From NCBI GenBank assembly GCA_035084275.1, contig CM068757.1, positions 9,548,001 through 9,612,000 on the forward strand: 64,000 nt of DNA. The letters run 5' to 3'. This document shows, one piece after another, positions 500 through 62,504 of the stretch. The translations under genes were made by a program, and so were the position numbers. This DNA comes from Hydrolagus colliei. Lineage: Eukaryota. The notes beneath the pieces are model-generated. The model had not been told where the DNA came from. It saw nothing but the letters and a program-made list of their open reading frames with translations, and ran no database searches. Each line of letters starts with the position of its first letter. Positions within the stretch are counted from its first letter, which is position 1.

Positions 500-907
500 T
501 TCCTCCCACGATGACTGAAATCAACATACCCTCTGGTATTGTGCACGGTGTCAATGTGCCTCTGACATGGGAGGTTAATGGCTTCAACCCACGGGCCATT
601 GTAATTGCTGTATTGGTGAAGAGGAAAGTGGATCAGGAAGCAAAGCAACTGTTTCATTGGCAGATCCCAGAGAAAGAAAAGCAGCCAATCCCACATGATA
701 TTACCCCCAGCATTGCTACACAAGTTAACTCCTTCACTGCTGAGGTGGCAACGATTGAAAAGACAGATAAAGGGACTTTCAGTGTGAAGTGCAGCGTTGC
801 CATGTGTGCTGATGTAATCAGGGATAATGATGCTGAATTCACTGTTGAAGTTAAACATCAGGCTCTGGATAATCCTCTCACTAAAGCTATAACATTATGT
901 GTCGCAG
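500..907 (+). CDS. Gene A exon D2, C1-derived Ig domain (VPPTMTEINIPSGIVHG...LTWEVNGFNP...FSVKCSV...EFTVEVKH...LCVA)
   Basis: ttttacag acceptor at 498-499, donor g|gtaaat at 908; 408 nt, open; inside ORF 487..1110. Confidence 0.85.
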
Positions 908-29011: not shown

Positions 29012-29072
29012 ATGTCCTCACCCGGAGGAGCTGCCAAGGCGCTGATCCTCGGGGCTTGGATTGCAGGATCAG
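29012..29072 (+). pseudogene. Leader exon copy 2, degenerate (MSSPGGAAKALILGAWIAGS)
   Basis: First ATG is out of frame; 12-nt deletion in the hydrophobic core; donor g|gtacag intact. Confidence 0.55.
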
Positions 29073-31740: not shown

Positions 31741-32048
31741 CCACTCCGAAACTGGATGCGATCTGGAAAGCATCAGGGCTGGCGATCACCAAGGAGGAAC
31801 TCGTACTGAACTGCAGAATCCACTCCTTTTCCCCAAAAGCTATTGGCGTTGTGTGGTGCAAAGATGGGGAGGAATTGCCCGAGAGCGTGGAGCTCAGTGA
31901 TCCCATTTGTGGGAAGGATGGCCTGTATTGCTGCTTGAGCACGTTGAGATTAATGCCCATCAAAAATGCTTTTGCCAGCAAGTACACGTGCAGAGTTTAC
32001 CATGAAAGTCTGGCTCAGCCCAAAGAGATGGAGTGGATCCTAGATTGA
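31741..32048 (+). CDS. Orphan canonical C1-set Ig exon ending in a stop (ATPKLDAIW...LVLNCRIHSFSPKAIGVVWCKDG...YTCRVYHESLAQPKEMEWILD*)
   Basis: tcattcttag acceptor at 31739-40; phase-1 reading open for 102 codons with B-strand Cys, C-strand Trp and YxCxVxH motif; TGA at 32046-48. Confidence 0.75.
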
Positions 32049-38622: not shown

Positions 38623-38722
38623 ATGTTGAGGGGGACAAACTCGGCTATAATGTCCTCACCCGGTGGAGCTGCCAGGGCGCTGACCCTCGTCCTGATCCTC
38701 GGGGCTTGGATTGCAGGATCAG
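38623..38722 (+). CDS. Gene B leader exon MLRGTNSAIMSSPGGAARALTLVLILGAWIAGS
   Basis: ATG at 38623, donor g|gtacag at 38723; nearest leader upstream of the V exon. Confidence 0.75.
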
Positions 38723-41700: not shown

Positions 41701-44700
41701 GGACATGGAGTAGGGTTGCAAAGCTGTGAATGGCCTTGAAAGTGAGGACGGGGATCTTGAATTAGATCCCCTGGGGGATGGGGAGCCAGTGGAGGCGGGC
41801 GAGGGTGGGAGTGATGTGGTCTTGGAGCTTAGTACGGGAGAGTACATGAGCTGCAGAGCTCTGAATAGTCTGGATCTTGTGAAGGGAGGAGCTGGGAAGG
41901 CTGATGAGGAGAGAGTTCCCGTTGTCAAGCCTTGATGTGATCAACGTGTAAACAAGCGTTTCAGCAGCTTGGGGGGTGAGGCAGTGGTGGAATCTGGCAA
42001 TGTTGTTGAGGTGGTGGAAGGCAGTTCCGGTCATGGTGCAGATTTGGGGGAGGAAGGACAGTCCAGGATTGAACAAGACGACCAGATTTCTGACTGACTT
42101 TGAGAGATGGAGAGTACAGCCTTGGTTGGATGCTTTTGTTGCCAGCGCCTGAGGTGTGGAGGTGCTGACACGAGCCAATTAGGAGGGCCTCCGGCTTGTT
42201 GACATTTAGTTGGAGGAAGTTGTCCCTCGTCCAGGAATCAATGTCAGACAGACACGCAGTCAGAAAGCCAGTAGTCCTGGAGTTGAGGGAGGAAGCGGAA
42301 AGGTAGAGTTGGGTGTCATCCGCATACATGTGGAAATTTACCTCATGTGTTCGGATGATGTCACTGAGGGGGAGAATGTAGAGGGTGAAGAGGAGGGGGG
42401 GGGGCAAGGACAGAGCACTGAGGGACGCCACAAGACGTGCGAGGGCTTGTAGAGTGAGTGATTTGAGAGGAAAGAGCGGAGCTGGGAGGCAACTACTCTT
42501 TCAAGGACAGGAGGAATGGAGGTCAGGGAGGACAGGGGTAAAATGGTGACCACAGGCGTGGTTGAACAAGGAGGGTCTTGAGTCTTCCCAAAGACAGCCC
42601 TGGTCAAAATCTCAAACCACATTCTTAACATCTGATGAGCAAAGTCACATGCGCAGCCAAGGAAATTGGGGAAAATATCTTATTGAGAGTTTCTCCACAA
42701 TCACGGCAACTTACCGTGTATGTAACGTGCTTCAGGAGGGTGGCATCTTGGAGCACTTGACAGCGGCAAGATTTCACGCCAACCTGGAGAGAGAGGGGGG
42801 GTGACCGAAAGTGCGGTCAAAGAGAAAAGTCTTCAATTGCAATTTGAAGACGGACAAAAAAGAGTTGAAATGAAGGGATTGAGGCAGCAAACTCCAGAGG
42901 TTCGGAGTATAATGGCTGAAAACACGGCCACTATATATTCAGTTGAGGGGATGAGGCCGTGCAAAGTGACTCAGTTGAGCTATGGCAGTCGGTAGTGGAG
43001 TGGGTGTGCGTAAGCAGATCGCAGAGGTCGGGAGGGATCAGGGTCGGAATTGATTTGCATGTGAGAGGGAGGATCTTGAAATCGATCTGTTCTGCAATAG
43101 GCAGCCAGTGGAGTCTTGCAGGGACTCGGGTAATTGGGGTGCAGAGTCTCAAATGGGTGAGGACATGGGCGGCAGAGTATTGCCTCAACCCGTTATTCTC
43201 TGGATAACCTTCAGGGTACAATTCCATAGGCACAAGCTGTGCATCAGTGCTCTGCCCAAGGGGTCCATTAATTGCAAATGCACACGAGCATGCTGTTTAA
43301 CATTCACCCCTTGGTGTTGTCAACAAACGCATGGGTAGGACTAGATTCTCTTTCTACAATATTCTTGAAGCAGTAGCTCATCCCAACCTATGAATTTTAA
43401 CCTGCTTCTAATCTCAGATAATCAAACCTGCTATTCTGGTGTTTAAAATGCTCAGTTGTCATCAATGTTTTGGAATGCCTGTTGTTTTTACACAGATGCT
43501 TTGGAGATGACAATATTTAAAGAGCCATTGGAGGTCTTATTGAATGAAGATGTTGTCCTCGAATGTAACGTAACTGGCTTCACTGAGCAGGTTCTCAACC
43601 TTGATATTGTTGCTGTTGAGTGGAATTTGGGCTCCAGTCAAGTCTATTCATTTAATGGAGGGGACATTAGTGCAAAAAGAACAGGAGCAAAAATAATGAG
43701 AGAAAACTTGAAGAGTGGAGATGCCTCACTACATCTCCCGAAGGTGCAGATTTCCGATGAGGGCTATTACACGTGCATTGTTTTTGTGACCCCAGAAAAA
43801 GTGGAAAAGCGTTCGTCCATTGTGGTGCTCGGTAAGTGCAGTGAAGCATCTCACGGGGTGTATTGTGCGGTTTGTAATGGTATATTCATAAGATCGGTTG
43901 AGATGAATCTGGTTCTTCAGGCCATCTGAGTTTATCCATCCAAACTTCCCATCCTTCCATCAATTCATCAGGCTATTTTAATGTCCTGGCTGCAAGCACC
44001 CTGCAAGCAAACTGTTCCAGTTATTAATCTTGTGGAGTCCTGTAGCTCAGTGGTTGGGCCACTTGCCTTGCAAGCAGGAGACCTGGGTTCGATTCCAGGC
44101 AGGGTGAACCTTGCGCCAGTTTCTTTACTCCACACGCCTGATAATAATCCCTCAAAAAAAATTGGTCAATTCAATCTACATCTGTTTGTGAGACACTCCT
44201 GTTTGCAATTGGCTTATCACCCACAAAATATACAGACAATTCACTAACAGTATATTCTGTGAAGTGCTTTGAGATGCCTGGAAGACGTGAAAAACCATGA
44301 TATCAAATGCAAGGATTAATCAGACCTTAGATAAAGAAATACTACCTGGTGTCTGTCCTGAAATTGTCCTTTTCAATTTGTTGTCAGACTCCACAACTGT
44401 GAGGCGCTCTGGGTTGCACTCCTTTGTGAAGTGCACTATACTATGAAAAGGCAAGCTGTTGTTGTTAAACCTATTTCCTCTTGTTCTACCAGCTGGATAC
44501 ATAACATTTAGTTTTGGCTTTATTTTTTCAATCCCATTTGAAATGTTTTCTATATATTCCGCTCAGCGCAAGTTATTTTGACATCTCTCAAGACGGAAAA
44601 GACTTCAGATTGTCTCATCGTTGCTCCTAGCCATGGACAATAGAATTTTGCAGAAATATTTGCCCCAAATTGGGGGGTATTTCGGCTTATGATGCAAGGG

Positions 44701-47700
44701 AATTTGGCAAATTTGTGAAAAATTGCAAGGATTTTTGCTATTGAGAGGTACATAGCAACAATGTACTGCCAAGCCATTTTGTTCACTTCATTGATTAAAA
44801 ACTACAGATAAAGAAACAACAACAAAAACAATTTGCATTTATACAGTGCCCTTCACACTTGTTAGCATCCCTGAGTAATCCCAACGCAGGCTTGAATGGG
44901 GAAATGGGCTTTGCTCATTCCCGAGGCCCCGCTGTTGTGACTGTGGGTGTCGCTCTCTCTCACCTGAGTGTGTGTCCCTCTGTGAGTATGCGTCTCAGCG
45001 TCTGTGTGTGTCAGTGTGTGGTGGCGAGCCCCGAGAGGCAGGAGGTGGTGATCTCCTGGAGCCCCCACCCCCAAATCGAGTGGGTCACCCAGGCTTGTTA
45101 AAGGAAGCATTTTTTTTGGCAGCAATTTAACATGTGTTATTTCTTAATGTTTCGTTTTCATCAATGAAATGTAATAATGTAGGTTGGCAGTAAAATATGC
45201 CTCAATAGCACCAATCAATCCCCCGCAGCCCTGCAAATTTCCTCGCAATTTTGGGCAAATATTTGCACAATTTTCTATTGGCCTTGATTATGATAGGGTA
45301 AATAGTAACATGTTATTTCCACTGGTTGGTGAACCAGTAACAAGATAACACAGGTTTAAGCTAACCACAAGAAGAATGCTGGAGATGTACACAATTAGGA
45401 GAGGTTTTTGACAGTTCAAATGGGAAGAAACATTTCCATGAGTTGGGGTGTCAAGTGACTAGGTAGTATAAGTGTCATAAGATGAGTGATAAGAGAGGTT
45501 AGGCAAACATTTGTCACTCCGAGGTGTTGGGGTGTGGAATAGACTGCCACGGAAGGTGGTAAGAGTCATAACAAGAGTAAAAAGCAGAGTCCATTGTGTT
45601 TCCAGATGTTAATATGGGAGGCTTGAAGGGGTTGGGAGAAAAAGAAAACGCAGTGGAATTCAATGAAAAACATGAGTTGAAAGCTAGAGAGAGACTTGAT
45701 GGGCCAAATGGCCACCTTCCGTAATGCAAATTGATACGATTCTGTGAATTGAAGGGGAGGGTAGAAAAAACGTTTCACCAACCAGCTGCTGTGATGTGGA
45801 ACTCTCTGCCGTTATCCATTCTTGAGGCAGAGTCCGTAAATTCTTTCTGATGCGGGATTAGATGCAACAGCTTGTAATTATACAGCACCCCTTGAGCATG
45901 GTAGCCTCCCAGAGCGCTCAAAAAGAGGAAATTTGTGGGAGTGCAAAGGAAAGTGGCATTAGTTGTGTTCATGGTAAGTAAAGCAGCAGTGCATTTGATG
46001 GATGATCGACCTGTTTCTTGCCTGTAACATTCTATCAGACATTTACACAACTTGATAAGGTGCTCTATCAAATGCAAAGATTATTATTTCACAATATTGT
46101 CTTCCAGTTTGCACTCATGAGCCAAATCATCTTTTGTTTGCCCTTCAATTCCCACTCTCCCACCATCATAATTATCATGTCCAAACGAAATATTCCTACA
46201 GTGTGTTAACCACAAAGCTCAGTTAAAACACATTGATTAGCGTAATTGTAATTAACCTCTCTGCTTAAGCAAGCACTGTTACCACTTAAAATTTCTTAGA
46301 TGAACTAGCAATAATTTCTAGGTCTGCAGTACCTCGGGATTTCTAAAGATGAGGTGCAATTCCTGGTTTCCCGTTGCTGAGGCTGGAGTAAGTATGTATG
46401 TTGTGGGGAGAAGATAAAAATGCTGCTCCAACGAAAATATTAATACAGAGCACTTTTGCGATCTCTACAGCTAAGCCAAAGGTTATCTTGTCTCCACATC
46501 ACATCAAAATCAACAATGGTTCAGAGGCCACTTTGACGTGTGATGTTAATGAATTTTACCCTGAGATGCTCAAGATCAGCTGGGTCAAGGTATCGCATGG
46601 TGCGGAGATGCAAATTACAACAGGTATCTTGACACGAGATGTAGTTACCAACAAGGACAGCACGTTCAGTGTTTCCAGCAAGTTGACAATCAGACCAACC
46701 GTGGACGACAATGGTAATCAGTACAGGTGTGTGGTGCAGCACAGAACATTCAGTGATACTCTTACACTGGAGACAGAGCTGACTGTGGTGATTGAGAATC
46801 CACAGGAACCTGCAGGATATGGACCTGGAGCTGTTATTGGAGGTGTAATCGGTGTTGTCCTGATGGTGATTGTGGTCTTTGTTTTAGCGGCACTTTACTT
46901 TTGGAAGAAAACGAAGCAAGGTAAGGATCTTCACAGCCCTAAACAACAACGGCAGACGTGGGGGTGATTTATTATACACTAAATGGTCTTGTGCACATTT
47001 TCTATTAATAGAGAACAGTCAGCTGACACTTGATCAACTGAAATAGATATTATCCTAATGACAGGCAAAAAGTTTATGTCGAGGCCTCTGCTCTCTGGGA
47101 CATTTACCTGAATCTTTTCTAAAGACTTACCTGCTTGATCGTGCTTTTGATCACGAGCAGCATTCCCTGCTTCCTCTTGCCACCTCACTCAGTGATCCAC
47201 ACTGTAAAGTACTTGTAAGGTACTTTGAGATGACATCAAAAGATACTGCATTAGGGCAAATTGTTGTTATAACTGTGGTGATCATTACCCAGGTTTCTTG
47301 AGAGAATTAGAATATTTGATGTTACTTTTTGTATGTTCCACAGCTCCTCCCAAGATCAATGAAATCAACAAACCCACTCGCTTTATACATGGGCAGCGTG
47401 TCGATCTGAGATGGGAAGTGACTGGTTTCAAACCAAAAGAGATAGAGATCATGATATTACTGACGAGGAAAGGAAAACAGCCACTGGAGCTATTTGTCTG
47501 GAAATTCACAAAGAATAAAAATGAAGGTCAGGTTGAAGAAGGTTTTCATCTCCTGAAAACAAAAAATGGATCTGACGGGGATAATTCGTTCTCTGCTGAC
47601 ACCCCACAATGTGATCAGCTCGAAAAAGGGACCTTCAGGGTAAGGTGTCACTTATGGTTCTGTCCTGATGTATCTGAGGACGATGGAGCTCAAATAACAA

Positions 47701-50700: not shown

Positions 50701-53700
50701 CTCCCATAATTACTGAATGGCCGGCAACCCCTGATATGACACATGGTGACACCTCCACTCTGAGTTGGTCAGTGACACGGTTCAATCCACGTCCCATTGT
50801 AATTGCTGTATTACTGAAGAGAAAAGGGGAGTCAAGATCACAGAAGCTGTGTTATTGGCAGATGGAGAAAGAACAACCAGCAGGAAATCAACCAGTAAAC
50901 ATTCCTGTTAGCCATGACACAAAGGATGACTCCATCAATCCAGAGATGGCAACGATTTTACAGGGAACAAATGGGACTTTCAGTATGAAATGCAGTGTTA
51001 CCATAAATGCTGATGTATCCAGGGATGATGGCGCTGAGTTCACTGTTGAAGTTCAACATGACGCTCTGGAGAATCCTCTCACTGAATCTGTAACATTACG
51101 CGTTAAAGGGGGTAAGTGCTGCCTCTGTCTGTTCTCTTCTCTCTCTCCCTCACACATCAGTGTAGAAATATTCAGGTGAAGGTGATGATTTTACAAACAG
51201 AGGAGTTTGAAATGATCTGTTAATCTCCAGAGTGAGCTTTGCGGCTGTGTGTGAAGAGAGGCCACATTATTCAGGGCTCCACAGTCACATGGTCAAAATT
51301 ATTTTGTACACAATAAATAATCTGGTGATTTCTGACAAATTTGTAACGTTAAAATATAAAATCGAATGTGTATATATGCACTCATATGGGTGTCAGCTCC
51401 GAGCATGAAGCACTCTAACCTCTCGTCCATAAGGTTGTGGGTTCACATCACATCAGGATCTGAACCTACAGTCGAGTAGGGACTTGTAATGAGGAAATTA
51501 AATGATAATATCTTAAAGAATTTGATTGTTGACAATGGTTTCAATTTCAAATAATAATTCCCTTTATTACCATCTAGGATGACACTGCAGTGTGTGCTGG
51601 GGGGGCTCTGTAATGCTGGAGTCTGTTATTTCAGATGTTAAACCATGATCTCATCTGGGTGTTCAGCTAAATGGCCGGCAACCCCTGATAAGACACACTT
51701 CAGCACTAAAACAATTTCTCCAGTGTTGTGTCCTTCATCTCTTGCTCTATGTGTATGTCTAGCTCTCTCTCTGTCTCCCTTTCCCCCTTTCTCTCTTCCT
51801 TTCTCTTGTAATCAGTCGGGATAAAATGTAGAATTTGAAATTATTTATTTGTCAAAAGGCCAGTGTGCACCCTGTCTGGGGGCAGCTCTTGCAGGTTACT
51901 GGAGGCTTAGACAGGCTGAGTGCTTATGATGGAGTTTAACATCACTCTACAGCTCCAGCCTGGTGTCCTCTGCCATGACTTGCAGGCTTTTCACTCGTTT
52001 CTGTGGATTCAGTTTCCAATTTGTATCTGACACAGACATGGACTTGAATGTTTTTATGTGGATTTGTCATTTTGTTTTGTAGTTCCTCCTAAAATTACAT
52101 TTCCAAATCAAAAGAAAATGAAACATGGTAAGAATGCTGAGCTGCAATGGACAGTGACTGGGTTCACTCCTGGGAAGATCTCGATTGTTTCCAGTCTTCG
52201 AAGGAAAGGAGAGGAAGTAAGACAACTGTTTCACTGGGAAATTCCAAATAAGGAAGCATTTCAAAGGAAGAGAATCCCCTGGAATCTTGAGGACAAATCA
52301 GAGAGATCCAACAATGTTGCCTCCTTCACTGCAGTGGTGCCTAAATGTGAACACGACACCAAAGAAGGAACCTTCAGAGTAAATTGCAAAATCAACATGA
52401 CTCCTGATGTGTCCACGGATGATGGAGCTGAATTAATTGTTCAGGTTCAGCATGAGGAATTTCCTGAGTTTGTCACTGACAGTTTAAAAATAAACATTGC
52501 TGGAGGTAGGTTCTGCCGTCAATATTGTGTCCTCTCTGTCCCATATGCTCTGTGGCAGTGTTTAGAATAAAGTAACAGTTTCCTCCACAATGGTTCAGCA
52601 ACTGAGATCACCACTCAGTGAAACCCAGAGCCTCTCAGTCCAGAAGGTGGCAGGATATGGCATCTGAGAAATCTCGTCATAGTGCTTAAGATTATCCAAA
52701 CCAGAGAGTTCATATGTGCCATCTACATGTGGAAATTTCCCTTTTTCCAGAATGGAATGCTCACAGTAGTAAACAAACGTGGATCAAGAACTTGACTAAT
52801 AGGACTACCTCAGGATTGATTTTACTCCGATATTGTCAAGTGCGTTATTGTTCAAACAGAGAGTGAGTTTGTCCCAGTGTCCTGGCCAACGATCCCCATT
52901 ATAAAATCTGTCACTTAATTCATCGCTATTTACAAAAGGTATGCATCCTGTTTACCTGTTACCAGAGAGCATCAGCTGCACGTTGGCAAGATACAAAGCT
53001 TGGAGGTCACAGAGTATGTGCTGGAATACTGTGGGAATTTAAGAAGGGAAATGCGCATAGTTTGCTATTTCTAGTTAGGACCACACCACCTGTTAAGGCT
53101 TTGGTTTGCAGGGTTAACAAGACCTGAATAGGTAGAATCCATGCTCTCAGTGACTGGTCTTGCTGTCCCAGGCCTGCTGATGAGCCAGGCCGACTGGTTT
53201 ATAATGCTGTGTACAAGTTGGCTGACACATTTGACTTCAAGTACAGAGCCAGTGAACTTCACACACAAATTTTGTGATGCGCTCTGAGACGTCTCAGTGA
53301 TGTGATAAGGTGTTATATCAGTTGCAAGAATTATAAGGATTATTAGAATGTTGTAGCCATCTTATCTCAGAGGAGATACTGCACACCTCTGTTCCCCCTC
53401 CCCCCAGGTGGGCTGAGTTGAGCTGAGGCAGTAGCTGTGCAGCTCTGTTTGGTCTCTGTGGGTGAATTGTCTGCCCACATTGATAGTCTGGGCTGAGACA
53501 TGAGAAACCCTGGTAATTAATAGAGAAAATAATCCAAGCTCACCTCCTGATCAGCACCTTGGATACCTCTCACCTTCACAATATCGGACAGGTCAGATCT
53601 CTGCAGCTGGGAAGTACACACACCACACAGAGGGTTTACAGGCTGAGTAACATTATTACAGAGTGTATGTTATACAGGACTCATTTACAGTTTGGTTCCA

Positions 53701-56700
53701 CTGGGTGCTGTGTTCATGAGTCCGTCCGGCACAGTTGGCAGTGCTCTTGTCTCTGTGTCAGAAGGTATTGAGTTCAAGCCCCACATTGACACACTGGCTG
53801 TCACTCCAGTGCAGTGCTGCAATGCTTATATTGTGTTTCTGTTTGATAGCTCCTCCTCAAATTTGTGGACCTTATCCACCCGGGAAAAGTCTGCATGCTG
53901 TGAAAGACACAGTGACATGTGTAGTTATTGGTTTCACTCCTGGGAAAATGACCATAATTTTCAGCCTGAAGAGGAACGGGCAGCAACAGCAAATACAACG
54001 ACTGTTTCACTGGGAAATTCCCAACAAGGAAATATTTCAAGAGTCGATAGGAGGAGCTTTTCCTCTGCAGGACCGATCGGATAGAGACAATAAAGATGCG
54101 TCCTTCACTGCTTTGGTGCCAAAGTGTGAACCTCTTGGCGATGGGACTTTCAGAGTAATTTGCATCATTGATATGATTCCTGATATTGATATGGATAATG
54201 GAGCTGAATTATCTGTTGAGGTTCATCATGATGTTATTGTTGGCTCTCTCACTAATACTGCAATATTACTCATTACTCCAGGTAGGTTCCTCGATCATTG
54301 TTGTGTCTCTCTGTCTCTGTGACAATGTTTAGGACATTGTAATGATTTGCTCCCCGATGGCCCAGCAGCTGAGGTCATTGCTCAGTACAGGGTTGAGTCG
54401 AGTCTCTCAGGCCAGAAGCTCTGAGATTCGAGTTCTGGTCTGGGAGCTGATCTGAGCTGACCTGGGCCAGTAGCTGTGCTGGTCCGTTTGTATGTCAGCC
54501 TGGAGGTTTGGTAGCACTTTTGCCTCTGACTCAGAAGGTTGTGAGTTTAAGCCCCACGTCAGGACTTGGAATCACATCGTCTAAGCTGACACTCACTCCA
54601 ACGCAGTGCTGGATGTCTGTGCATTATCGGTGGTGCCGTCCGTTAAATGAGATGTTAAACTGACGTTCTACCCGCTAGTTCAGGTAGACATTGTAGATCC
54701 CATAGCGCTATTCAAAAAGAAAAGGGAAGTTTCTTCAATCCCACAACTAACATAGGTCACTCATCCCATGGTTGTTTCTGGGACATTACAGTATGCAAAC
54801 TGGTTGCTGTGTTCGCCAACAAAATATGCAGTGAATCCACTTCACAGTATAACCTGTGTAGCACTTTGAGACATAATAAGGTCTATTTCAAATGATAGGA
54901 TATTAGAGAATATAATCAAAGCTCACGATCACCACAGTGGATATCTCTCACCTCAGATGTATCAGGTCTCAGATGAGATCTCTGCAACTGGGAAGCAACA
55001 GCCTTAATGCAGTGTGCACAGTATGCAGAGGATAAGACCATAAGATTTAGGAGCAGCAGTAGGCCATTAGGCCTCTCGAGCCTGCCACGCCATTCAATAA
55101 GATCATGGCTGATGTTCTAATCTAACTCCACCTGCCCACCTTATCCCTTAAAACCTTTATTCATAAGAAATCTATCAGGATGTAAGTACTCGGTGTACAT
55201 TTTACAGGATGTTGTAGTTTTTTCTGGGGCAGCTCTATTGCAGGTTGATGGAGAGATGTTGGGGCTCGGTGGTCGTGGTGCAGCTTAACGCCAGGCTACA
55301 GCATTGTCTGCTGTCCTCAGGAATAATGCGCACATCTGTCTGAAGGTTTGCAGCAGATTTGGATTGTAAATATTGTGTGAAGCAATGCGTGGGTGGTGCA
55401 GTGTGTCCTGTAACGGGAATATAATCTACATTTGCTGCTTGTGTTTGTTTTATAGCTTCTCCCACAATTACTAAAATCCAGGTCCCCCCGAATATTAAGC
55501 ACGGTGCCACCTACACTCTGAATTGGTCAGTGACTGGGTTCCATCCATGGGCCATTGTAATTGGTGTAAAACTGAAGAGAGGAGGGGAGACGAAAGAAAA
55601 GAAGCTGTTCAAGTGGAAGACGACAGAGAAAATTCCACCACCTGGAGTGATGCCAGTAAGGATCCCTATTGAATCCCAATCAAAGGATGATCTCATCACT
55701 TCTGAGGAGGCGATGATTATACAGGAGAAAACTGGCAATTTCAGAGTGAACTGCAGTGTTACCATGGTTCCTGATCTATCCAGCGATGATGGCGCTGAGT
55801 TCATTGTTGAAGTTAAACATCAGAACAAAGCGCTCACCGAAAAAGTAACATTACACGTTAAAGGCGGTAAGTGCTGACACTGTCTGGTCTCCACACTCTC
55901 TCCCTTGCACATCACTGTAGAAATGTTCTGCTGAATGCAATGACTTTAACAACGAGAAGAGTTTGAAATGATCTGTAAGTCTCGAGTGAACATTGAGGCT
56001 GTGTGTGACGAGAGGGCTTGATTCTATTCATTTATTATTAATCCATGACTGTTTGTGGGACACTGCCATACGCAATTGGCTGCTGCCTTTTGCCCACAAA
56101 TATACAGTGAATTCACTTTGCAGTACCGTATATCTCCGCATATAAGGCGCACTTTTTTTCAGGTCGGAAGATCTCGAAAGTGGGGGGTGCGCCCTATACA
56201 CAGGTACAAGCAATTTTGAGCCTCGGAGATACAGTAAACAGGAGGGGCGGCCGGCGCGCTGTCAGCCGGGGTTTGGTCAGTGTCCGGCGGGGGTTGGGAG
56301 GAGCGGGTGACGGGGCTTCGACCTCGGCCGCCCGGGCAGCGGCAGCAGCAGCGGACTTCAGTGCTGTGCATACCTTCTGCCGAACCCAGTCTGCCTCACT
56401 CCCTGCCGCTCTCCCCCTCTCTCTCTCCCGGGCTGCCGGCCTGCCGCTCTCCCCCCCCTCGCTCTCCTGGGCTGATGGCCTGCCTCTCTCCCCCCCTCTC
56501 TCTCCCGGGCTGCCGGCTGCCTCTCTCTCTCTCTCTCTCCCTCTCTCTCTCTCTCCCGGGCTGCCGGCCTGCCTCTCCCTCTCTCTCTCCCGGGCTGACG
56601 GCCTGCCTCTCTCCCTCTCTCCCTCCCTGGCTACCTGGCTGCCTGCCTCTCTCTCTCTCTCTCTCCCTACCTCCCTTCTGCCGACAATATCATTGAAAAT

Positions 56701-59700
56701 GTTTCCGTTTTTTTTCACCAAGAAAAGGTCAAAAACGAGGGGTGCGCCTTATACGCGGAGATATATGGTACATTCTGTGAAGAGCTTTGAGATGTCTAGA
56801 AGACATGAGAAGCACTGTATCAAATGCATTATTATTATAAGTCACGTCACAGGCAGATGTTCAATGGGGATTTATTATTTTATACATGGTGGTAAATAAT
56901 CTGGTGATTTCTAGGAAATATTTAATATTAAAACACGATATCTTACACCATTATATATGCATAACTATGGGTGTCAGCTCTGAGCATGTTATCCTGTTGT
57001 CCCTTGTCCAGAAGGTTGTGGGTTCACATCATATCAGGACCTGAACTTCCAGTCTAGTGCAGAGACTTGTAATAAGGAAATGAGTGGATCATATCTTATA
57101 AGGAATTTAATTGTTGATGGTTTCAATTTCAAATGACAGTTTCCTTTATTGTAGACTTTCTCAAGTCAATGGATATACTAGTACTAGGCAGTATAGTATC
57201 TAGATAAAGTAGTGCCTAACTCAGGAGAAGCAACCGTGATCAGTTACCCATCGCTTGGGAGAACTCAGGCATTCTCTTACTTATCAGTTTATTTTCCTCG
57301 TCTCCCTCTCTCTCCCTCTCTCTCTCTCCCACGTTAGCAGTCCATACTTATATGCAGCCTGTTTCAGGAATGTCTCATCGTTAACTCCAAACGTTCCAAG
57401 TTTGTTCCCAGGTGCAAGGTACATAACTGAAATTATAAACACCCGTACATTAAGTTTGCTCATCTTGCTCATTATGCACTTGATGTACCAAGAAACAATA
57501 TCTGTGAGATCAGTCAGCTTTTTAAGATTGGGGATTTGAACAAAATCAACAGTATCTGTGAGTTGAATTAGCTCGTGTCTCCTGAAAGTTGTTTTCTCAC
57601 ACTCAATTTTCAGTTATTCTTTACCCAAGATTACGCCTTGTACGAGAATCAAACCTGACTTGAGACACAAGTGCTCTAACCACTGCCCTACAGGACTAAA
57701 ACAATCTTGAATTTTGGTGTAGATCCATATCATGTCTAGAGGACTATCTCAAAGTGCCTCACAAGATTCAAAGTGAAATGGAGTAACTGTATCAGTAGAC
57801 AAATGTGGCTTCACGATAGCACACAGCAATGTCTCACAAACAGTGATGGAGTGAGTGATCAATTGTATTTGGGTATTTGATGGCCAAAACACCAGAAGAA
57901 CTTTGTTCGCTTTTTGAGTAATGCCACATGTGCTTTAATGTCCACCGGAAGAGGCAGGTGGTACTTCGGATTAACATCCATTCGTGGGATGTATCTGTGC
58001 AGCTGGGAAGGAACAGCCTTAATATTGTCAACACATTGTGTAGAGGATATAAAGACTTCAAGTAACATATTACAGTGTGAACGTTTTACAGGATGATGAT
58101 GCAGTTGTGTCTGGGGGCAGCTCTGTTGCAGGTTGATGGGGAGGGGATGGGGTTCTGTGGTCAGGGTGTAGAAATATCACTGTAGAAATATCGAGGTGAA
58201 GAATGGCTTTATTCACAGCTTCACACTCACATGGTCAAAGGAGGTTTATTATATTGTACACAGTAAATAATTGGTGATTTCTGACAAGAATGTAATATTA
58301 TAATATTAAAACCATTATATATGCATGTACTGTATATGGATGTGAGCTCAGAGCATGTAGCATCTCTTGTCAGAAGGTTGTGGGATCGCATCACATCAGG
58401 ACCTGAACTTACAGTCTGGCATGACACTGTGCAGTGTGTGCTGGGGGAGGCCTGTAATCCTGGAGGTGCCATCTTTTGGTTGAGGTGTTGAACCGCTGTC
58501 CCGTCTGCCTGTTCAGCTAAACGTTAAAATTCCTACAGCACGATCAAAAAGAGAAGGGAGTTTCTCCCATTGTCTTGGCCTCTATATATATCTCTCCGGC
58601 TGTGTGTGCGAATCTCTCTCTTTGTGTCTCTCTATCGCTATATCTCTCATTATCTCGCTCATTCCCACTTTCTTCTTTTCTCTCGTATTTATTTAGGGAA
58701 AAATTTAGAACTTTATTATTCATTTGAATAATGAAATTATTAAATTATTCATTTGTTGAAAGGCCAGTGTTCACCCTGTCTGAGGGCAGCTATTGTATGT
58801 TACTGGAGGCTCAGACAGGCTGTGTGCTAATGATATAGTTTAACATCACTCTGCACCTCCAGCCTGGTGCCTTCTGCCATGACATGCAGGCTTTTCACTT
58901 GTTTCTGTGGATTTTGTTTCTAGTTTGAGTCTGACACAGACATAGACTAGAAATGTGGTTGTCTATAGCACACAGGTGTTTCCCACAAATATTCCCGGAT
59001 TGAGTGACCAGATTATTATATTTGTTTAGCTATTATGTGCTGCAGAGAGTGATTGGCCAATCCATGAACCATCTAACATCTGCTTACTGCTGGGTAAACA
59101 GAAGCATGTGGAATAATGAAATTTTTGCCCTCGTTAAGTGAAAATTTCATTAGGCGGGAGGGAGGTCCCTACTGTGTTTCTGTGCATGAAGATAATCAGT
59201 TTCATTCCCAGTAATGCCTTGCTCTTAGCCTAGCGCCTAGCGCTACTAATTGCGGTGTACCAACGACGCATAAGGCAGGTAGAACTGCTATTGGAGAGAG
59301 ACTGGGAGTTAGGGAATGGCGATATGGGATTTTTGCGGATATGGATATATCGGTTTGCTCATACCTGCTTAAACCGATCTATCGAGTTTTTGTACTGCGC
59401 ATGCGCGTGCATTCGAAGTGCGCGTGCATTGATGGCGCGCGCGCATTTATGGTGCGCGCTCAGTCGCGGTGCGCGCGCATTGACGGTGCGTCCGCACTGA
59501 CGATGCGCGCACAGTCGCGGTGCACGCACATTTCGAAATGCGTGCTCTAGGTCCAGAAAGTTTGTAATGTTGTTGTCAAGGTCTGTTGATTTATACGATG
59601 TTGTTTGCTCCCTACCTCCCCCTCTCCTTCTCTCCCTCCTCTCCTCTCTCCTTCNNNNNNNNNNNNNNNNNNNNNNNNNNNNNNNNNNNNNNNNNNNNNN

Positions 59701-62504
59701 NNNNNNNNNNNNNNNNNNNNNNNNNNNNNNNNNNNNNNNNNNNNNNNNNNNNNNNNNNNNNNNNNNNNNNNNNNNNNNNNNNNNNNNNNNNNNNNNNNNN
59801 NNNNNNNNNNNNNNNNNNNNNNNNNNNNNNNNNNNNNNNNNNNNNNNNNNNNNNNNNNNNNNNNNNNNNNNNNNNNNNNNTCCCCTCGCTCCTTCTCTCC
59901 CTCCTTTCCCCCTCTCCTTCTCTCCCTCCCTCTCCTCTCTTCCTCTCTCCTTCTCTCCCAACTTTCCCCCTCTCCTTATCTCCCTCCACCTCTAAACACA
60001 AAATAGAACACACACACACCAAAAACAAAATCTAGAGATTTATTCTCCTCCATTTCTTGCTTGAAACTAGCATGTAATGTCCACGTGTAAATGAGATCTA
60101 TTACAATAGAAAAGAGAGAGACAGACAGTCTGACTGTTAGTTAGAAGCCAGATTATCACTGCTGTGTGTGTCTGACTAGACCCACACATAGAAACAGTGA
60201 TAATCTGGCTTCTAACTCTCTCCCACACAAAAATAACACTTACAGCCACAAAATGCCACTTATTTTTATGTAGTCTGAAGTCTGAATTAATGTCCTTCGC
60301 CATTGGCAAGCTCTCCTTTGCTATGCAAAAAGTGACAGCGTTCGTGATACTTTGCCACTTTTTGTCCCCTCTCTGGTACAATGTTCTCTCCTCTTAAATA
60401 AAGCAGGAATTGTTTGAGCTGCACTGGCCCCACTACCTGTCGCTTTCTCCGAAGCGCTGGTTCGACTTCCTGCTGTTGTCGACAATGATTTCGCTCTGAG
60501 GGCAGCGTGCTGGGCGGGGTGGTGCTGCTTAATGTGTTGTCGCAGGTTGCTCGTGCTCGAATCAGATGTCTTAACCAAGACCTTGCAAACTGTACATCTA
60601 TACACACCATTACTGACTGCATTGTTTTCAAAGTAGTCCCATACGGGGCTTCTTTTCCCCATGATGAGAAAGGTAAATTTTCAAACTACAATTTTCAGCG
60701 ATGCCACTTTGTTAACACGCCACGACTCACGTCGAGTATACACGGTAAAGTGTGCGCGCGCATCGGATGTGCGTGCCCGTTAATTGTGCGCGCGCACCGA
60801 ATGTACGCGCATTCCATGCTCTAGATCTAGGAGGTTGCAATGCCGGCGACAAGGTAAGCTGGAAAAGATCGCATTACACTGATAATACCAACAATATTGA
60901 TATATTGCCAGGAACGATATTAAAAATATATCGATGTATATTTTTAAAATCGAATCTCTCGATATAACAGTTTTTTTAGAATCACCATATCGGCATACCG
61001 ATCTGAAAATCATATCGGGTTTAATCGAAAAACCGATTAATCGCCGTTCCCTACTGTGAGTGAGATTGTGACAGTGAGAAACTCAGAGAGAGAGAGAGAA
61101 AGAGACACAGAGAGAGAGACTGGGTCAGAGATAGAAATAGAGAGAGAGAGATCGCGACCGAGACAGACAGAGAGAGAGAAAGAGACACAGAGAGAGAAAT
61201 AGAGAGAGAGAGACACACAGAGGGAGACTGAGACAGAGAGAGAGAGAGATGGAGAAAGAGAGAGACAGGGAGAGGGAGAAACAGACAGACAGAGAGAGAG
61301 AATGTAGCTTGTATCGCTTTTGGAAATGATCAAGCCGCCCGCTGCTAGCAGTAAAAGTCTCCGCTGGCTTTTTCACAGTAGCGTCATATAGTTGCCTAGC
61401 ATCCTGCTGCTTAACCTCCTCTCATACTGCACTGCTTTCTCTTGGATTAGGTGGCATGCTGAACTAAGTGTGTGTATGTATGTAGCTTCCTCGACTGAGA
61501 CTGCGCTTGTGTTGCGGAGGCTGCCGGGAGACGAGAAGCGCGCAAAATTTAAACTTTCTTTATAGCGAGCACAGCCTTCACTAAGCGCATGGGGGGGTAC
61601 AAATAGAAACCATCTTTATAGTGAAGTTTCATTAACAGGGCGTGTGTTAAGCGGGGGCTGCCTGAAGTGACACAGGATTCCTTAACATCCACCTGTGGAG
61701 GCAGATAGGACTTTGGTTTAAAATCTCATCTGTGGGACGTGTCTGTCGTGGGAAGGAACAACCTCAATACTGTCAGCACATCGTGCATGTATTGTAAAGA
61801 CTAGTGTAAAGAGTAACAGTGTGAATATTTTACAGGATGTGTAGTTGTGCCTGGGGGCAGCTCTGTTGCAGGTTGATGGGGACGTGATGGGCTCTGTGGT
61901 CAGGGTCCAGCTTAACACCAGCCTGCAACATCGTCTGCTGTCCTCAGCAATAGTGTGCAGCTCTGGATGTCTGAAGCTTTGCTGCAGATTTAGATTGTAA
62001 ATTGTGTGTGAAGCAATGTGTGAGGCAGTGTCGTGTGTCCTGTAGCTGGAATATAATCTTGACATGCTGCTTGTGATTGTTTTGTAGACCCTCCCACAAT
62101 TACTGAAGTCAATATACCCTCTGATATTAAACACGGAGCCCAAACCACTCTGAGCTGGTCAGTGACTGGGTTCAATCCACGGCCCATTGTAATTGGTGTA
62201 TTCCTGAAAGAATGGGAGCAGAACGCACAGCTGCTGTTTTGTTGGCAAACAACAGAGAAAACACAAGCAGAAAGAAAGAAGTCAGTGAAGATTCCAGGAA
62301 GCTCTGACAGAAACAATGTCGCCATCACTTCGAAGGAGGCAACGATTGAACGGGAGGCAACTGGGAATTTCAGGGTGAAGTGCAGTGTTACCATGGTTGC
62401 TGATATATTCAGGGACAATGGTGCCGAGTTCATTATTCAAGTTGAACATCAGGCTATTCTTGGGAAACCTCTCACCAAATCTGTACCACTACACGTTAAA
62501 GGGG
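38623..62504 (+). CDS. NCR3LG1: Gene B (3' partial): B7-H6/NCR3LG1-like type I membrane protein, L-V-C1-TM-(C1-like)x7 or more
   Basis: Ten phase-compatible open exons in order; V and C1 domains resemble B7-H6 (symbol means NCR3LG1-like, not proven orthologue). Confidence 0.8.
39277..41150 (-). mobile_element. 5'-truncated CR1-clade LINE, frameshifted, in intron 1 of gene B
   Basis: ORFs 39472..40089 (GVPPGSVLGP, FVDDTKLGG, FNVGKC, RDLGV), 40192..40539 and 40499..40807 (KSPGPDGLHP); absent from the paralogous block at 28650. Confidence 0.85.
41393..42600 (-). mobile_element. Degenerate L2 LINE (further fragment about 42790-43140)
   Basis: MYADDTQLYL, SRLDNGNSLL and [13 protein letters not shown] in frameshifted ORFs; (AAC)n tail at 41393. 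Confidence 0.8.
43496..43831 (+). CDS. NCR3LG1: Gene B IgV exon, B7-H6-like
   Basis: LNEDVVLECNV...AVEW...[41 protein letters not shown] parallels human B7-H6 as recalled (LNDNVTIFCNI...[41 protein letters not shown]). acacag acceptor, g|gtaagt donor, 336 nt. Confidence 0.9.
45340..45750 (+). mobile_element. CR1 3' fragment
   Basis: Ends in gggccaaatggccaccttcc, the CR1 3' hairpin-type motif also seen (reverse) near 39300. Confidence 0.55.
46471..46920 (+). CDS. NCR3LG1: Gene B IgC1 + transmembrane exon
   Basis: LTCDVNEFYP...ISW...NKDSTFSVSSKL...YRCVVQH, then hydrophobic GAVIGGVIGVVLMVIVVFVLAALYFW and basic KKTKQ; ctctacag acceptor, g|gtaagg donor; 450 nt. Confidence 0.9.
47344..47763 (+). 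CDS. Gene B exon D1, first post-TM C1-derived domain
   Basis: ccacag acceptor, g|gtaaga donor, 420 nt, open; LRWEVTGFKP...FRVRC...QITMQVHH. Confidence 0.85.
49407..49814 (+). CDS. Gene B exon D2
   Basis: 408 nt, open, AG/GT; paralog of 500-907. Confidence 0.85.
50698..51111 (+). CDS. Gene B exon D3
   Basis: 414 nt, open, AG/GT; 9 nt longer than the gene A copy (in-frame). Confidence 0.85.
52083..52505 (+). CDS. Gene B exon D4
   Basis: 423 nt, open, AG/GT. Confidence 0.85.
53850..54281 (+). CDS. Gene B exon D5
   Basis: 432 nt, open, AG/GT. Confidence 0.85.
55456..55866 (+). CDS. Gene B exon D6
   Basis: 411 nt, open, AG/GT. Confidence 0.85.
56126..56768. mobile_element. Complete Tc1/mariner-pogo type MITE inserted in a SINE
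   Basis: TA TSD; TIRs CCGTATATCTCCGCATATAAGGCGCAC / GTGCGCCTTATACGCGGAGATATATGG. Confidence 0.85.
59129..61664 (-). mobile_element. Tigger-like element, gene B copy: left TIR deleted, interrupted by a hAT insertion
   Basis: Junction atttttgccc|tcgttaag removes the left end; right TIR ends at 61664. Confidence 0.8.
59310..61053 (-). mobile_element. Non-autonomous hAT (ZBED1/Ac-like) element with BED zinc-finger remnant; contains N gap 59655-59880
   Basis: 14-bp TIRs TAGGGAATGGCGAT / ATCGCCGTTCCCTA; 8-bp TSD CTGGGAGT/CTGTGAGT. ORF 60321..60662: RSPVWDYF...CTVC...STSNLRQHIKQHHP, continued after a frameshift by KKWQSITNAVTFCIAKESLP. Confidence 0.9.
62088..62504 (+). CDS. Gene B exon D7
   Basis: 417 nt, open, AG/GT; 3 nt shorter than D7a-c (in-frame). 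Confidence 0.85.

What the first reader, a model, noticed from the sequence alone, without database searches (positions are those of the whole stretch)
38623..62504. B7-H6-like receptor with an apparently cytoplasmic array of at least 7 Ig domains behind the transmembrane helix
Seen: leader, V, and C1+TM (ending KKTKQ) exons are followed in frame by seven open phase-1 Ig-like exons, 975 codons in total. No second TM is visible, and the array runs off the window. Known: the V and C1 resemble B7-H6/NCR3LG1, the NKp30 ligand, whose human tail is retroviral Gag-like rather than Ig; C1-set domains are normally extracellular or luminal. Inference: a type I protein with a small B7-type ectodomain and a roughly 1000-residue cytosolic Ig array, which could act as an intracellular scaffold, sensor or decoy in immunity. 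I do not know of a functional description of this architecture.
Basis: partly seen in the sequence, partly recalled or inferred. Interest (0 to 1): 0.92.

Follow-up and report, generated by a model that had tools for sequence, protein, structure and literature searches.

The report
B7-H6-like gene, Ig modules behind membrane
A cartilaginous-fish B7-H6-like immune-ligand gene really does encode, directly after its membrane anchor, at least seven immunoglobulin-fold modules that have lost their disulfide cysteines. The same layout sits unstudied in gene models from chimaeras to alligators, so it is real, conserved and unexplained, but not unique to this window.

Summary
Leader, V, C1+TM and seven D exons are all AG/GT-bounded and phase 1-1, and they join without a stop (1270 codons; D1-D7 = 975). 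The assembly gap lies in the D6-D7 intron, so it cannot affect the frame.

The D exons are one module type, here called D-alpha. AlphaFold2 gives an Ig fold (pLDDT 90.8) closest to C1-set domains. No module has the F-strand cysteine, and Trp usually replaces the B-strand cysteine.

D-alpha is the first post-membrane module of a conserved 950-1250-residue family. That family is found in chimaera, sharks, rays, coelacanth, lungfish, bichirs, amphibians and alligator, named "uncharacterized" or "NCR3LG1". Here the module is tandemly amplified, as in Callorhinchus and shark paralogs. Compared with the collinear Callorhinchus locus, the reading frames are kept (0 of 5000 simulations stop-free) while dN/dS is about 1.1.

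My best reading (0.6) is a type I B7-H6-like ligand with a cytosolic Ig-module rod. The cytosolic location is inferred, not shown. TM-less predicted isoforms of the long form, and conserved cysteine pairs in two of its later modules, keep an extracellular reading alive. I found no functional description in the literature I could search.

The parts
38623..38722 (+). Leader exon (start codon, signal peptide), phase-1 donor
   Evidence: ATG at 38623, hydrophobic h-region, GT donor after 38722. A 98% identical copy lies at 26417-26522.
43496..43831 (+). V-set exon (B7-type)
   Evidence: Pfam V-set 1e-08. PDB hits CD276 8.2e-14 and B7-H6 7.4e-11. Matches the family ecto-V profile at 7e-41.
46471..46920 (+). 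C1-set domain and transmembrane helix fused in one exon, ending KKTKQ
   Evidence: Pfam C1-set 1.3e-15. Hydropathy 3.16 with a positive C-flank, and no usable phase-1 donor between C1 and TM. Matches the family ecto-C1 profile at 5e-40.
46921..47343 (+). 423-nt intron between the TM exon and D1
   Evidence: no AATAAA/ATTAAA signal and no leader-type ORF with a usable donor. Read-through would add 14 residues and then stop.
47344..47763 (+). D1, D-alpha-type Ig module
   Evidence: D-alpha profile 3.2e-38 against next-best D-beta 4e-19.
49407..49814 (+). D2, D-alpha-type Ig module
   Evidence: 6.6e-32.
50698..51111 (+). D3, D-alpha-type Ig module
   Evidence: 9.5e-35.
52083..52505 (+). D4, D-alpha-type Ig module
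   Evidence: 8.1e-31.
53850..54281 (+). D5, D-alpha-type Ig module (the only type that keeps a B-strand Cys)
   Evidence: 6.9e-26. Pfam C1-set 19.2 bits, below the cut-off.
55456..55866 (+). D6, D-alpha-type Ig module (the one modelled)
   Evidence: 5e-33. AlphaFold2 pLDDT 90.8, pTM 0.85. Foldseek top hits are MHC II beta2 and beta2-microglobulin.
59655..59880 (.). Assembly gap inside the D6-D7 intron
   Evidence: CT-rich flanks. The join is corroborated by collinearity with the upstream copy. Nothing was filled.
62088..62504 (+). D7, D-alpha-type Ig module; last one before the window ends
   Evidence: 1.9e-36. The same unit is triplicated in the upstream copy.
500..18784 (+). Tail of the upstream tandem paralog: eight D-alpha exons. 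D2' 500-907, D3' 1792-2196, D4' 3175-3597, D5' 5124-5555, D6' 6738-7148, D7a about 11938-12357, D7b about 15074-15493, D7c 18365-18784.
   Evidence: 95-97% nucleotide identity to 48910-59131 in exons and introns alike, with splice sites kept.
31741..32048 (+). Canonical C1-set exon of D-gamma type with both cysteines, ending in an in-frame stop two codons before the ancestral donor. It is either the last exon of the upstream gene or a remnant.
   Evidence: Pfam C1-set 5e-15; D-gamma profile 1e-33.

Best explanation
This is a member of a tandemly duplicated, fast-evolving B7-H6-like gene cluster of a holocephalan-type cartilaginous fish.

The primary product is a type I membrane protein. A cleaved signal peptide comes first. 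A small ectodomain follows, made of one B7-type V domain and one C1-set domain, and is presumably a ligand for NKp30-family receptors. Then comes one transmembrane helix and, seven residues later, a head-to-tail string of at least seven (probably ten or more) about 138-residue Ig-fold modules that end up in the cytosol.

The modules are amplified copies of D-alpha, the first post-membrane module of an ancient jawed-vertebrate family. That family has the layout V-C1-TM-alpha-beta-gamma-delta-epsilon-zeta-eta. The modules no longer need a disulfide, because Trp and an aliphatic residue fill the two cysteine positions.

I infer that the array acts as a rod-like, multivalent platform under the membrane. 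Its length and valency change by exon duplication. It would couple the display or signalling of the ectodomain to cytosolic partners. This is comparable in principle to the folded B30.2 tail of butyrophilins or the FnIII tail of integrin beta4.

Shown: exon structure, module fold and type, conservation of the layout, open-frame maintenance, rapid amino-acid change. Inferred: splicing of TM to D1 in this particular gene, cytosolic location, and any function.
For: - All ten exons are phase-compatible, AG/GT-bounded and open.
- The TM-to-D1 intron is only 423 nt, with no polyA signal and no leader ORF.
- The same tight C1TM-to-D1 spacing and fused C1+TM exon occur in two Callorhinchus paralogs. 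RefSeq joins them into single models: XP_042197527.1 (717 aa, complete) and XP_042197504.1 (1309 aa: C1-TM-8 modules-short tail).
- Models that start inside the array begin at an internal Met of a module and have no signal peptide (P0196, P0003).
- The layout V-C1-TM-Ig array is found in 17 of 18 long-form homologs from chimaera to alligator, each with a positively charged C-flank.
- UniProt V9K7L7 (P0159) runs through TM into the array and differs from the RefSeq model at 8 of 1079 residues, so it is an independent sequence.
- D modules: Ig fold at pLDDT 90.8, nearest to C1-set domains. The F-strand Cys is present in 0 of 15 modules and the B-strand Cys in 2 of 15. The F-strand Cys of D-alpha is also absent in 18 of 18 long forms, and delta, epsilon and zeta each keep only one of the pair, whereas the ectodomain V and C1 keep both in 18 of 18.
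- N-glycosylation sequons are enriched in ectodomains (39 against 28.6 expected, z 1.95) but at chance behind the TM (76 against 81).
- AlphaFold2 of the Callorhinchus paralog gives V, C1, one helix (261-285), then beta-sandwiches starting at residue 290.
- Coding constraint: 282 differences in 1638 nt from the Callorhinchus locus gave no stop (9.3 expected; 0 of 5000 simulations), and all 4 indels are in frame. Between the two copies in the window, P(no stop) is 0.03.
Against: - No transcript or protein data for this gene were available, so the 46920-to-47344 splice is predicted only.
- A RefSeq isoform of the Bombina long form lacks exactly the 34-residue TM segment. A Scyliorhinus torazame model also lacks it. 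In the Callorhinchus long form the TM is a separate, skippable exon. A secreted form with the array outside the cell is therefore plausible for the long form.
- D-beta and D-gamma keep both canonical cysteines in nearly all species, and the post-TM regions hold 3.1% Cys. Both are unusual for cytosolic proteins.
- dN/dS of about 1.1 in D1-D4 and 0.93 between the two copies is not what a conserved cytosolic scaffold would show.
- All exons are phase 1-1, so skipping the C1+TM exon would also give an in-frame secreted product.
- The 3' end of the gene lies outside the window.
Confidence: 0.6

Rival explanations
1. The functional array is extracellular. The main long product would skip the membrane-spanning exon (here the whole C1+TM exon; in long forms the small TM exon) and be secreted as a multi-Ig protein. 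TM-containing transcripts would be a separate, short membrane form, and gene predictors chain the two together.
For: - Bombina isoform X2 lacks exactly the TM segment, and the S. torazame model P0011 lacks it too.
- The TM is a separate exon in the Callorhinchus long form.
- A second family caught by the D profile also has both mid-chain-TM models and TM-less models.
- The canonical Cys pairs of D-beta and D-gamma are conserved.
- dN/dS of about 1 is typical of exposed immune surfaces.
- All exons are phase 1-1.
Against: - In this subfamily C1 and TM share one exon with no usable internal donor, in three loci.
- D-alpha modules have no disulfide pair but one invariant unpaired Cys each, which is awkward in the secretory pathway.
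- There is no polyA signal after the TM exon.
- V9K7L7 and 17 of 18 long forms carry TM plus array in one chain.
- Sequons behind the TM are at chance level.
Confidence: 0.22
2. The D array is a separate transcription unit (a leaderless, purely cytosolic multi-Ig protein, or a gene with a first exon not recognised here) that merely lies downstream of a short-tailed B7-H6-like gene.
For: RefSeq splits the collinear Callorhinchus locus into a 'partial' V-C1-TM-D1 model and a following 1139-residue array-only model. Several UniProt/Ensembl models are array-only.
Against: - Those array-only models start at internal methionines of a module. D1 is already inside the upstream model.
- The 423-nt interval has no leader or promoter-like first exon.
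- Phase and spacing are conserved in three loci.
- The complete models P0002 and P0194 span the junction.
Confidence: 0.08
3. The array, or one of the two tandem copies, is a decaying, non-functional by-product of segmental duplication.
For: pN/pS is 0.93 between the two copies, with exons and introns equally diverged. dN/dS is about 1.1 against Callorhinchus. The region is rich in partial duplications, leader-only copies and transposon fragments.
Against: There are no stops or frameshifts in 15 modules. All splice sites are kept. Open-frame maintenance is significant (P = 0.03 within the window; 0 of 5000 simulations against Callorhinchus). All indels are in frame. The 16 invariant core positions are kept.
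Confidence: 0.1

Closest known systems
Human B7-H6 / NCR3LG1 (ligand of NKp30)
   Same: Signal peptide, B7-type V domain, C1-type second domain and a single TM. B7-H6 chains are among the best solved-structure hits of the V exon (7e-11) and of the D-module model (3pv6_A, rank 29). NCBI names the Callorhinchus counterpart 'NCR3LG1-like' and the frog and alligator long forms 'NCR3LG1'.
   Different: Here the tail is a string of folded Ig modules. CD276 scores slightly better than B7-H6 for the V domain. Receptor binding is untested.
Long-form 'uncharacterized / NCR3LG1' models (Callorhinchus LOC103174895 / UniProt V9K7L7; Latimeria LOC102345720; Alligator and Bombina NCR3LG1)
   Same: The ecto V and C1 match their profiles at 1e-40. 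A D-alpha module follows the TM after about 7 residues. There is one Ig module per phase-1 exon.
   Different: Long forms have one D-alpha followed by beta-to-eta modules, an acidic linker and a conserved C-terminus, with the TM on its own exon. The window gene has D-alpha amplified at least seven times, C1 and TM fused in one exon, and no beta or delta-to-eta exons in view.
Callorhinchus milii cluster paralogs LOC121850342 (XP_042197527.1), LOC103173843 (XP_042197504.1), LOC103175084; shark D-alpha expansions (Heterodontus XP_067902348.1, Stegostoma, Scyliorhinus)
   Same: The same subfamily: V-C1TM-(D-alpha)n. The module order D1-D5 is the same, followed by a repeated last unit. The loci are collinear at 76-84% nucleotide identity including introns.
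   Different: Only 52-66% protein identity. Copy number differs (3, 8, and at least 7 here). The shark versions have acidic linkers between modules, which are absent here.
Butyrophilins (V-C-TM-B30.2)
   Same: A B7-related ectodomain joined through one TM to a folded beta-sandwich domain in the cytosol. This is the nearest precedent for how such a protein could work (established knowledge, not tested here).
   Different: No PRY/SPRY domain was found in the parts scanned. The tail here is Ig-fold and repeated.
Integrin beta4 cytoplasmic FnIII array; filamin and titin Ig rods
   Same: 'Extracellular-type' beta-sandwich modules used in tandem, without disulfides, inside the cell as scaffolds (established knowledge).
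   Different: Different fold subclass and no sequence relation. Those scaffolds are conserved, whereas these modules evolve at dN/dS of about 1.
Shark UrIg2 (VJ + nine C1 domains + C-terminal TM; PMC12227049)
   Same: Exon-wise tandem duplication and homogenisation of C1-type modules in a cartilaginous-fish IgSF gene. UrIg2 is the best solved-structure hit of the window's C1 exon (9dmx_A, 1.2e-17).
   Different: In UrIg2 the TM is at the C-terminus, so the whole array is extracellular and keeps its disulfides.

Membership tests
B7 family / B7-H6 (NCR3LG1) | N-terminal V-set domain of B7 type | tested here: met
   Pfam V-set 1e-08. PDB: CD276 8.2e-14, B7-H6 7.4e-11, PD-L2 7.6e-08.
B7 family / B7-H6 (NCR3LG1) | Membrane-proximal C1-type constant domain | tested here: met
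   Pfam C1-set 1.3e-15, against CD80-like C2-set_2 1.2e-05.
B7 family / B7-H6 (NCR3LG1) | Type I single-pass topology (signal peptide plus one TM) | tested here: met
   Leader with h-region; one TM (hydropathy 3.16); KKTK on the C-side. Sequence-based only.
B7 family / B7-H6 (NCR3LG1) | Orthology to NCR3LG1 specifically, rather than another B7 | tested here: inconclusive
   The sources name relatives NCR3LG1(-like), but CD276 outscores B7-H6 for the V domain. No tree or synteny with NCR3LG1 was made.
B7 family / B7-H6 (NCR3LG1) | Binds NKp30-family receptor | not testable with these tools
   No binding data. No NKp30-like gene was seen in the window.
Long-form V-C1-TM-alpha...eta family (LOC103174895 type) | Ecto V and C1 match the family profiles | tested here: met
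   7.2e-41 and 5.2e-40.
Long-form V-C1-TM-alpha...eta family (LOC103174895 type) | D-alpha module directly after the TM | tested here: met
   D1 hits the D-alpha profile at 3.2e-38. All D1-D7 are D-alpha type, and tblastn best matches are to residues 277-411 of P0159.
Long-form V-C1-TM-alpha...eta family (LOC103174895 type) | Modules beta to eta and the conserved C-terminus | tested here: not met
   None lie downstream within the window. The only D-gamma-type exon is at 31741-32048, upstream. The array runs off the window, so absence further on is not shown.
Long-form V-C1-TM-alpha...eta family (LOC103174895 type) | TM on its own small exon | tested here: not met
   C1 and TM share exon 46471-46920. 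They are separate in Callorhinchus L001.
Ig C1-set domain (for the D modules) | Ig beta-sandwich fold closest to C1-set | tested here: met
   AF2 pLDDT 90.8. Foldseek top hits are MHC II beta2 and beta2-microglobulin, E 4e-05 to 3e-04, TM 0.45-0.6. Profile against PDB: IgA/IgM constant, b2m, MHC alpha3.
Ig C1-set domain (for the D modules) | Canonical B-strand Cys to F-strand Cys disulfide | tested here: not met
   F-strand Cys in 0 of 15 modules; B-strand Cys in 2 of 15 (Trp in the others).
Ig C1-set domain (for the D modules) | Reaches Pfam C1-set gathering score | tested here: not met
   Best is D5, 19.2 bits against a cut-off of 21. The others have no Ig hit.
Ig C1-set domain (for the D modules) | F-strand x-V-x-H signature | tested here: met
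   V119 and H121 (D6 numbering) are invariant in 15 of 15 modules.
Butyrophilin | Cytoplasmic B30.2 (PRY/SPRY) domain | tested here: not met
   No SPRY/PRY hit in any exon or ORF scanned. The 3' end of the gene is outside the window.

The most novel reading that the evidence does not exclude
The ancestral B7-H6 of jawed vertebrates is a two-faced molecule. It would carry a small NK-receptor ligand outside the cell and, constitutively inside it, an array of C1-set-derived Ig modules. That would be the first case of the adaptive-immunity C1 domain adapted to the cytosol. In chimaeras and sharks the membrane-proximal module has been amplified and diversified (dN/dS at or above 1). This would make it a multivalent intracellular sensor or decoy surface that links the state of the cell's interior to display of the ligand. 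Mammals later replaced this tail.
Probability: 0.4. Interest if true: 0.82.

Novelty: new variant of a known kind. Interest (0 to 1): 0.62.

Why it matters
B7-H6/NKp30 is one of the oldest NK-type recognition pairs, but how the ligand is controlled from inside the cell is poorly understood.

If the Ig array really sits in the cytosol, it gives two things. It would be a conserved, roughly 450-million-year-old example of C1-type Ig modules working without disulfides inside cells. It would also be a butyrophilin-like "inside-out" design in the B7-H6 lineage.

The question is directly testable with descriptive data: junction reads, glycan and disulfide mapping, and localisation.

If the array is instead secreted, non-mammalian "B7-H6" would be a large soluble multi-Ig protein, which would also change how the family is viewed.

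Either way, public annotations ("uncharacterized", "partial", split models) currently hide a coherent family.

Tried and rejected
1. The search for homologous proteins with the C1+TM exon alone found nothing, because the length filter excludes full-length relatives. With P0164 and P0159 it returned only close chondrichthyan relatives.
2. Exact look-ups of P0167, P0010 and a window ORF in the contig collection found nothing, so no transcript contigs could be retrieved. The species of the window remains undetermined. It is collinear with Callorhinchus scaffold MU249848.1 at only 76-84% identity, so it is either another holocephalan or an old paralog.
3. A search for the short terminal exon of the Callorhinchus 1309-residue model in the window gave only chance matches. 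The 3' end of the upstream copy is undefined.
4. Flajnik et al. 2012 (PMC3709836) is not held. The NCR review gave nothing on the human tail.
5. I considered an internal donor that would remove only the TM and found none usable. I considered a hidden leader exon or polyA site in the TM-D1 intron and found none. I considered the D modules as a non-Ig fold and rejected it on the model and fold search.
6. N-glycosylation sequon counts in the window gene alone are uninformative, being at chance on both sides of the TM.
7. An acidic-dileucine-like motif in shark inter-module linkers is not consistent across species, so I dropped it.


Full report
**1. What is in the sequence**

The window has two N runs, at 7544-7702 and 59655-59880.

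Splice-site inspection gave this model:

| Exon | Coordinates |
|---|---|
| leader | 38623-38722 |
| V | 43496-43831 |
| C1+TM | 46471-46920 |
| D1 | 47344-47763 |
| D2 | 49407-49814 |
| D3 | 50698-51111 |
| D4 | 52083-52505 |
| D5 | 53850-54281 |
| D6 | 55456-55866 |
| D7 | 62088-62504 |

- All exons after the leader are AG/GT-bounded, have lengths divisible by three, and are phase 1-1.
- Joined as they stand they read 1270 codons without a stop. D1-D7 are 975 codons, exactly as reported.
- The joined protein has a typical signal peptide and one strong hydrophobic helix (residues 266-288, hydropathy 3.16).
- That helix is preceded by an acidic/neutral stretch and followed by KKTK. There is no second TM.

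**2. The gap**

- The N run 59655-59880 is inside the D6-D7 intron, so the frame does not depend on it.
- Its flanks are CT-rich microsatellite.
- Both sides are collinear with one uninterrupted stretch of the upstream paralogous copy (56519-59131 with 7707-10298; 61053-63161 with 10833-13054). Order and orientation are therefore corroborated.
- The longer interval here also holds a zf-BED transposon fragment.
- Nothing was filled in. A hidden exon cannot be formally excluded.

**3. What the D exons are**

- Pfam recognises the V exon (V-set 1e-08) and the C1+TM exon (C1-set 1.3e-15), but none of D1-D7 above threshold. The best is D5 at 19.2 bits against a cut-off of 21.
- The seven modules are 30-37% identical to each other, with 16 invariant positions.
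- A profile of them finds, among solved structures, only C1-set domains, and weakly: IgA/IgM constant, beta2-microglobulin and MHC alpha3.
- AlphaFold2 of D6, with the 15 modules of the window as alignment, gives a confident all-beta model (pLDDT 90.8, pTM 0.85).
- The best Foldseek matches of that model are MHC class II beta2 and beta2-microglobulin. V-like folds follow because of an inserted, variable C'-D segment. B7-H6 itself is rank 29.
- The canonical disulfide is gone. The F-strand Cys is absent in 15 of 15 modules. The B-strand Cys is replaced by Trp in 13 of 15. One other Cys, on the E strand, is invariant and unpaired.

**4. Relatives**

The profile search of 1.84 billion representatives gave 248 hits, 138 of them at E below 1e-10.

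*The long form.* Many hits are 950-1250-residue proteins with the same order:
- signal, V, C1, TM, then about seven residues later a D-type module;
- then six or seven more Ig modules, an acidic linker, a last Ig module, and the end. There is no second TM.

The sources call them "uncharacterized protein" or "NCR3LG1". They come from Callorhinchus, sharks, rays, coelacanth, lungfish, bichirs, salamanders, a caecilian, frogs and alligators.

I split this long form into module types, alpha to eta, and built a profile of each.
- All seven D exons are alpha type (1e-26 to 1e-38; the next-best type scores 1e-10 to 1e-19).
- The window's V and C1 match the family's ectodomain profiles at 1e-40.

*The amplified subfamily.* The window gene is therefore a derivative in which the first post-membrane module has been amplified. 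The same has happened elsewhere:
- Callorhinchus: XP_042197527.1 has V-C1TM-3 modules and is complete. XP_042197504.1 has C1-TM-8 modules and a 15-residue tail. XP_007886037.1 is a third model.
- Sharks: Heterodontus has 8 modules, and Stegostoma and Scyliorhinus also have expansions.

*The collinear Callorhinchus locus.* The window is collinear with part of the Callorhinchus cluster on MU249848.1 at 76-84% nucleotide identity, introns included. It is therefore an ortholog from another holocephalan or an old paralog. C1 and TM are fused in one exon there too, with D1 only about 160 nt downstream.

**5. The region**

- Positions 48910-59131 repeat 1-10298 at 95-97% identity, in exons and introns alike. 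This is a recent tandem duplication with a period of about 48.9 kb.
- The first 19 kb of the window are therefore the tail of an upstream copy: D2'-D6' plus three D7-type units.
- By analogy, the gene under study probably continues beyond 64000 with more D7-type units.
- Between the copies lie two leader-exon copies and a canonical D-gamma-type C1 exon. That exon ends in a stop two codons before the ancestral donor.
- The same interval also holds reverse-transcriptase and BED-finger fragments and tRNA-derived SINE-like elements.

**6. Is it coding?**

*Between the two copies in the window:*
- D2-D7 differ at 24 synonymous and 77 non-synonymous sites (pN/pS 0.93). All splice sites are kept and the only indels are in frame.
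- 101 random substitutions would leave the frames open in only 3% of trials.

*Against the Callorhinchus locus:*

| Exon(s) | dN/dS |
|---|---|
| V | 0.56 |
| C1+TM | 1.08 |
| D1-D4 | 1.12 |

- 282 differences in 1638 nt produced no stop, against 9.3 expected. None of 5000 simulations was stop-free. All four indels are in frame.

The modules are thus kept open by selection while their surfaces change fast. The variable part is mainly the inserted C'-D segment.

**7. Where is the array?**

*For a cytosolic location:*
- The signal peptide, a single TM and the positive-inside flank are conserved in 17 of 18 long forms.
- There is no leader ORF and no polyA signal in the 423-nt TM-D1 intron.
- No donor would allow the TM alone to be removed in this subfamily.
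- Array-only database models start at internal methionines without a signal peptide.
- UniProt V9K7L7 runs from the leader through the TM into all modules and differs from the RefSeq model at 8 residues, so it is an independent sequence. That it comes from the elephant-shark transcriptome is my recollection, not a tool result.
- Disulfide loss is selective. V and C1 keep both cysteines in 18 of 18 long forms. Alpha never has the F-strand Cys. Delta, epsilon and zeta each keep only one of the pair.
- Sequons are enriched outside the membrane (z 1.95) and at chance behind it.
- AlphaFold2 of the Callorhinchus paralog shows one helix (261-285) with beta-sandwiches on both sides.

*Against:*
- Beta and gamma keep both cysteines almost everywhere, and Cys content behind the TM is 3.1%.
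- The long-form TM is a separate exon, and a Bombina RefSeq isoform lacks exactly that 34-residue segment.
- A second family picked up by the profile shows the same ambiguity. It has V-C1-C1, then 10-16 C1-like modules. Some models have a mid-chain TM (P0018, P0044, P0049) and others do not (P0033, P0041).
- dN/dS of about 1 is unusual for a scaffold.

My weighting is as follows.

| Reading | Weight |
|---|---|
| Cytosolic array in the main product of this subfamily | about 0.6 |
| Secreted or extracellular array | about 0.2 |
| Separate transcription unit | about 0.1 |
| Decay | about 0.1 |

**8. Mechanism**

Shown: a B7-H6-like ectodomain, a constitutive TM, and an expandable string of disulfide-free Ig modules starting seven residues below the membrane.

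Inferred: the array is a rod-like multivalent platform in the cortex of the cell, whose length and valency change by exon duplication. It would tie display or signalling of the ligand to cytosolic partners. The closest working precedents are the butyrophilin B30.2 tail and the integrin beta4 FnIII tail (established knowledge). The fast evolution would fit a surface engaged by rapidly changing partners, for example pathogen factors. That is speculation.

**9. Literature**

Eight full-text searches and four papers read found no description of Ig modules behind the TM of B7-H6-like proteins. The key 2012 B7H6 paper is not held, so prior mention cannot be excluded.

**10. Verdict**

The gene is a new member of an annotated but unstudied family, and a structural variant of the known B7-H6 kind. 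The topology question is open and directly testable with descriptive data.

Noticed in passing
window 1-10298 and 48910-59131: Recent tandem segmental duplication with a period of about 48.9 kb and 95-97% identity in exons and introns alike. The window therefore holds the tail of one gene copy and the head of the next. Each copy's assembly gap (7544-7702; 59655-59880) is bridged by continuous sequence in the other copy.
   Followed up: yes
window 11900-19250 (exons about 11938-12357, 15074-15493, 18365-18784): The D7-type exon and its spacer form a unit of about 3.1-3.3 kb repeated three times (90-95% identical), with the start of a fourth spacer. This shows exon-level amplification still in progress.
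   Followed up: partly
window 26417-26522, 28992-29078 and 31741-32048: Two extra copies of the leader exon (98% and 85% identical), followed by a canonical D-gamma-type C1-set exon that ends in a stop two codons before the ancestral donor. The phases are compatible with a small secreted leader+C1 product (a beta2-microglobulin-like layout). Alternatively this is the last exon of the upstream gene, or debris.
   Followed up: partly
window 26775-27206 (+), 39475-40158 (-), 41964-42500 (-), 60324-60680 (-), 34271-35380 (+): Fragmentary reverse-transcriptase ORFs (Pfam RVT_1) in the intergenic region and in intron 1. A BED-zinc-finger fragment lies next to the assembly gap. A 370-codon ORF has a weak, sub-threshold DUF4371 hit. 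These are ordinary transposon remains and were not analysed further.
   Followed up: no
window 187-257, 44036-44107, 49096-49166: tRNA-like sequences (Rfam tRNA 37-40 bits; one called tRNA-Ala by ARAGORN) lie at the head of a repeat of about 300 bp. That repeat also occurs twice in the Callorhinchus locus L001 at about 80% identity, so it is a tRNA-derived SINE.
   Followed up: partly
proteins P0018, P0044, P0049 (mid-chain TM) and P0033, P0041 (no TM): A second, distinct family has a signal peptide, V-C1-C1, then 10-16 C1-like modules that keep their cysteine pairs and are joined by an FPWRP-type linker. Some models have a TM between ectodomain and array and others do not. Mid-chain TM followed by a C1 array may be a wider, undescribed theme, or a recurrent annotation artefact.
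   Followed up: partly
proteins P0172 and P0023 (Bombina bombina NCR3LG1 isoforms X1 and X2): The two isoforms differ by exactly a 34-residue segment that contains the TM, so a secreted form of the whole long protein is predicted.
   Followed up: yes
locus L002 10001-25068 (Callorhinchus MU249848.1): RefSeq splits what looks like one gene, collinear with the window gene, into two models. One is a 'partial' NCR3LG1-like model (V-C1TM-D1). The other is a 1139-residue array-only model that starts at an internal Met of a module.
   Followed up: partly
window 59402-59532: GC-rich tandem repeat (17-nt and 51-nt periods) just upstream of the CT-rich microsatellite that borders the assembly gap.
   Followed up: no
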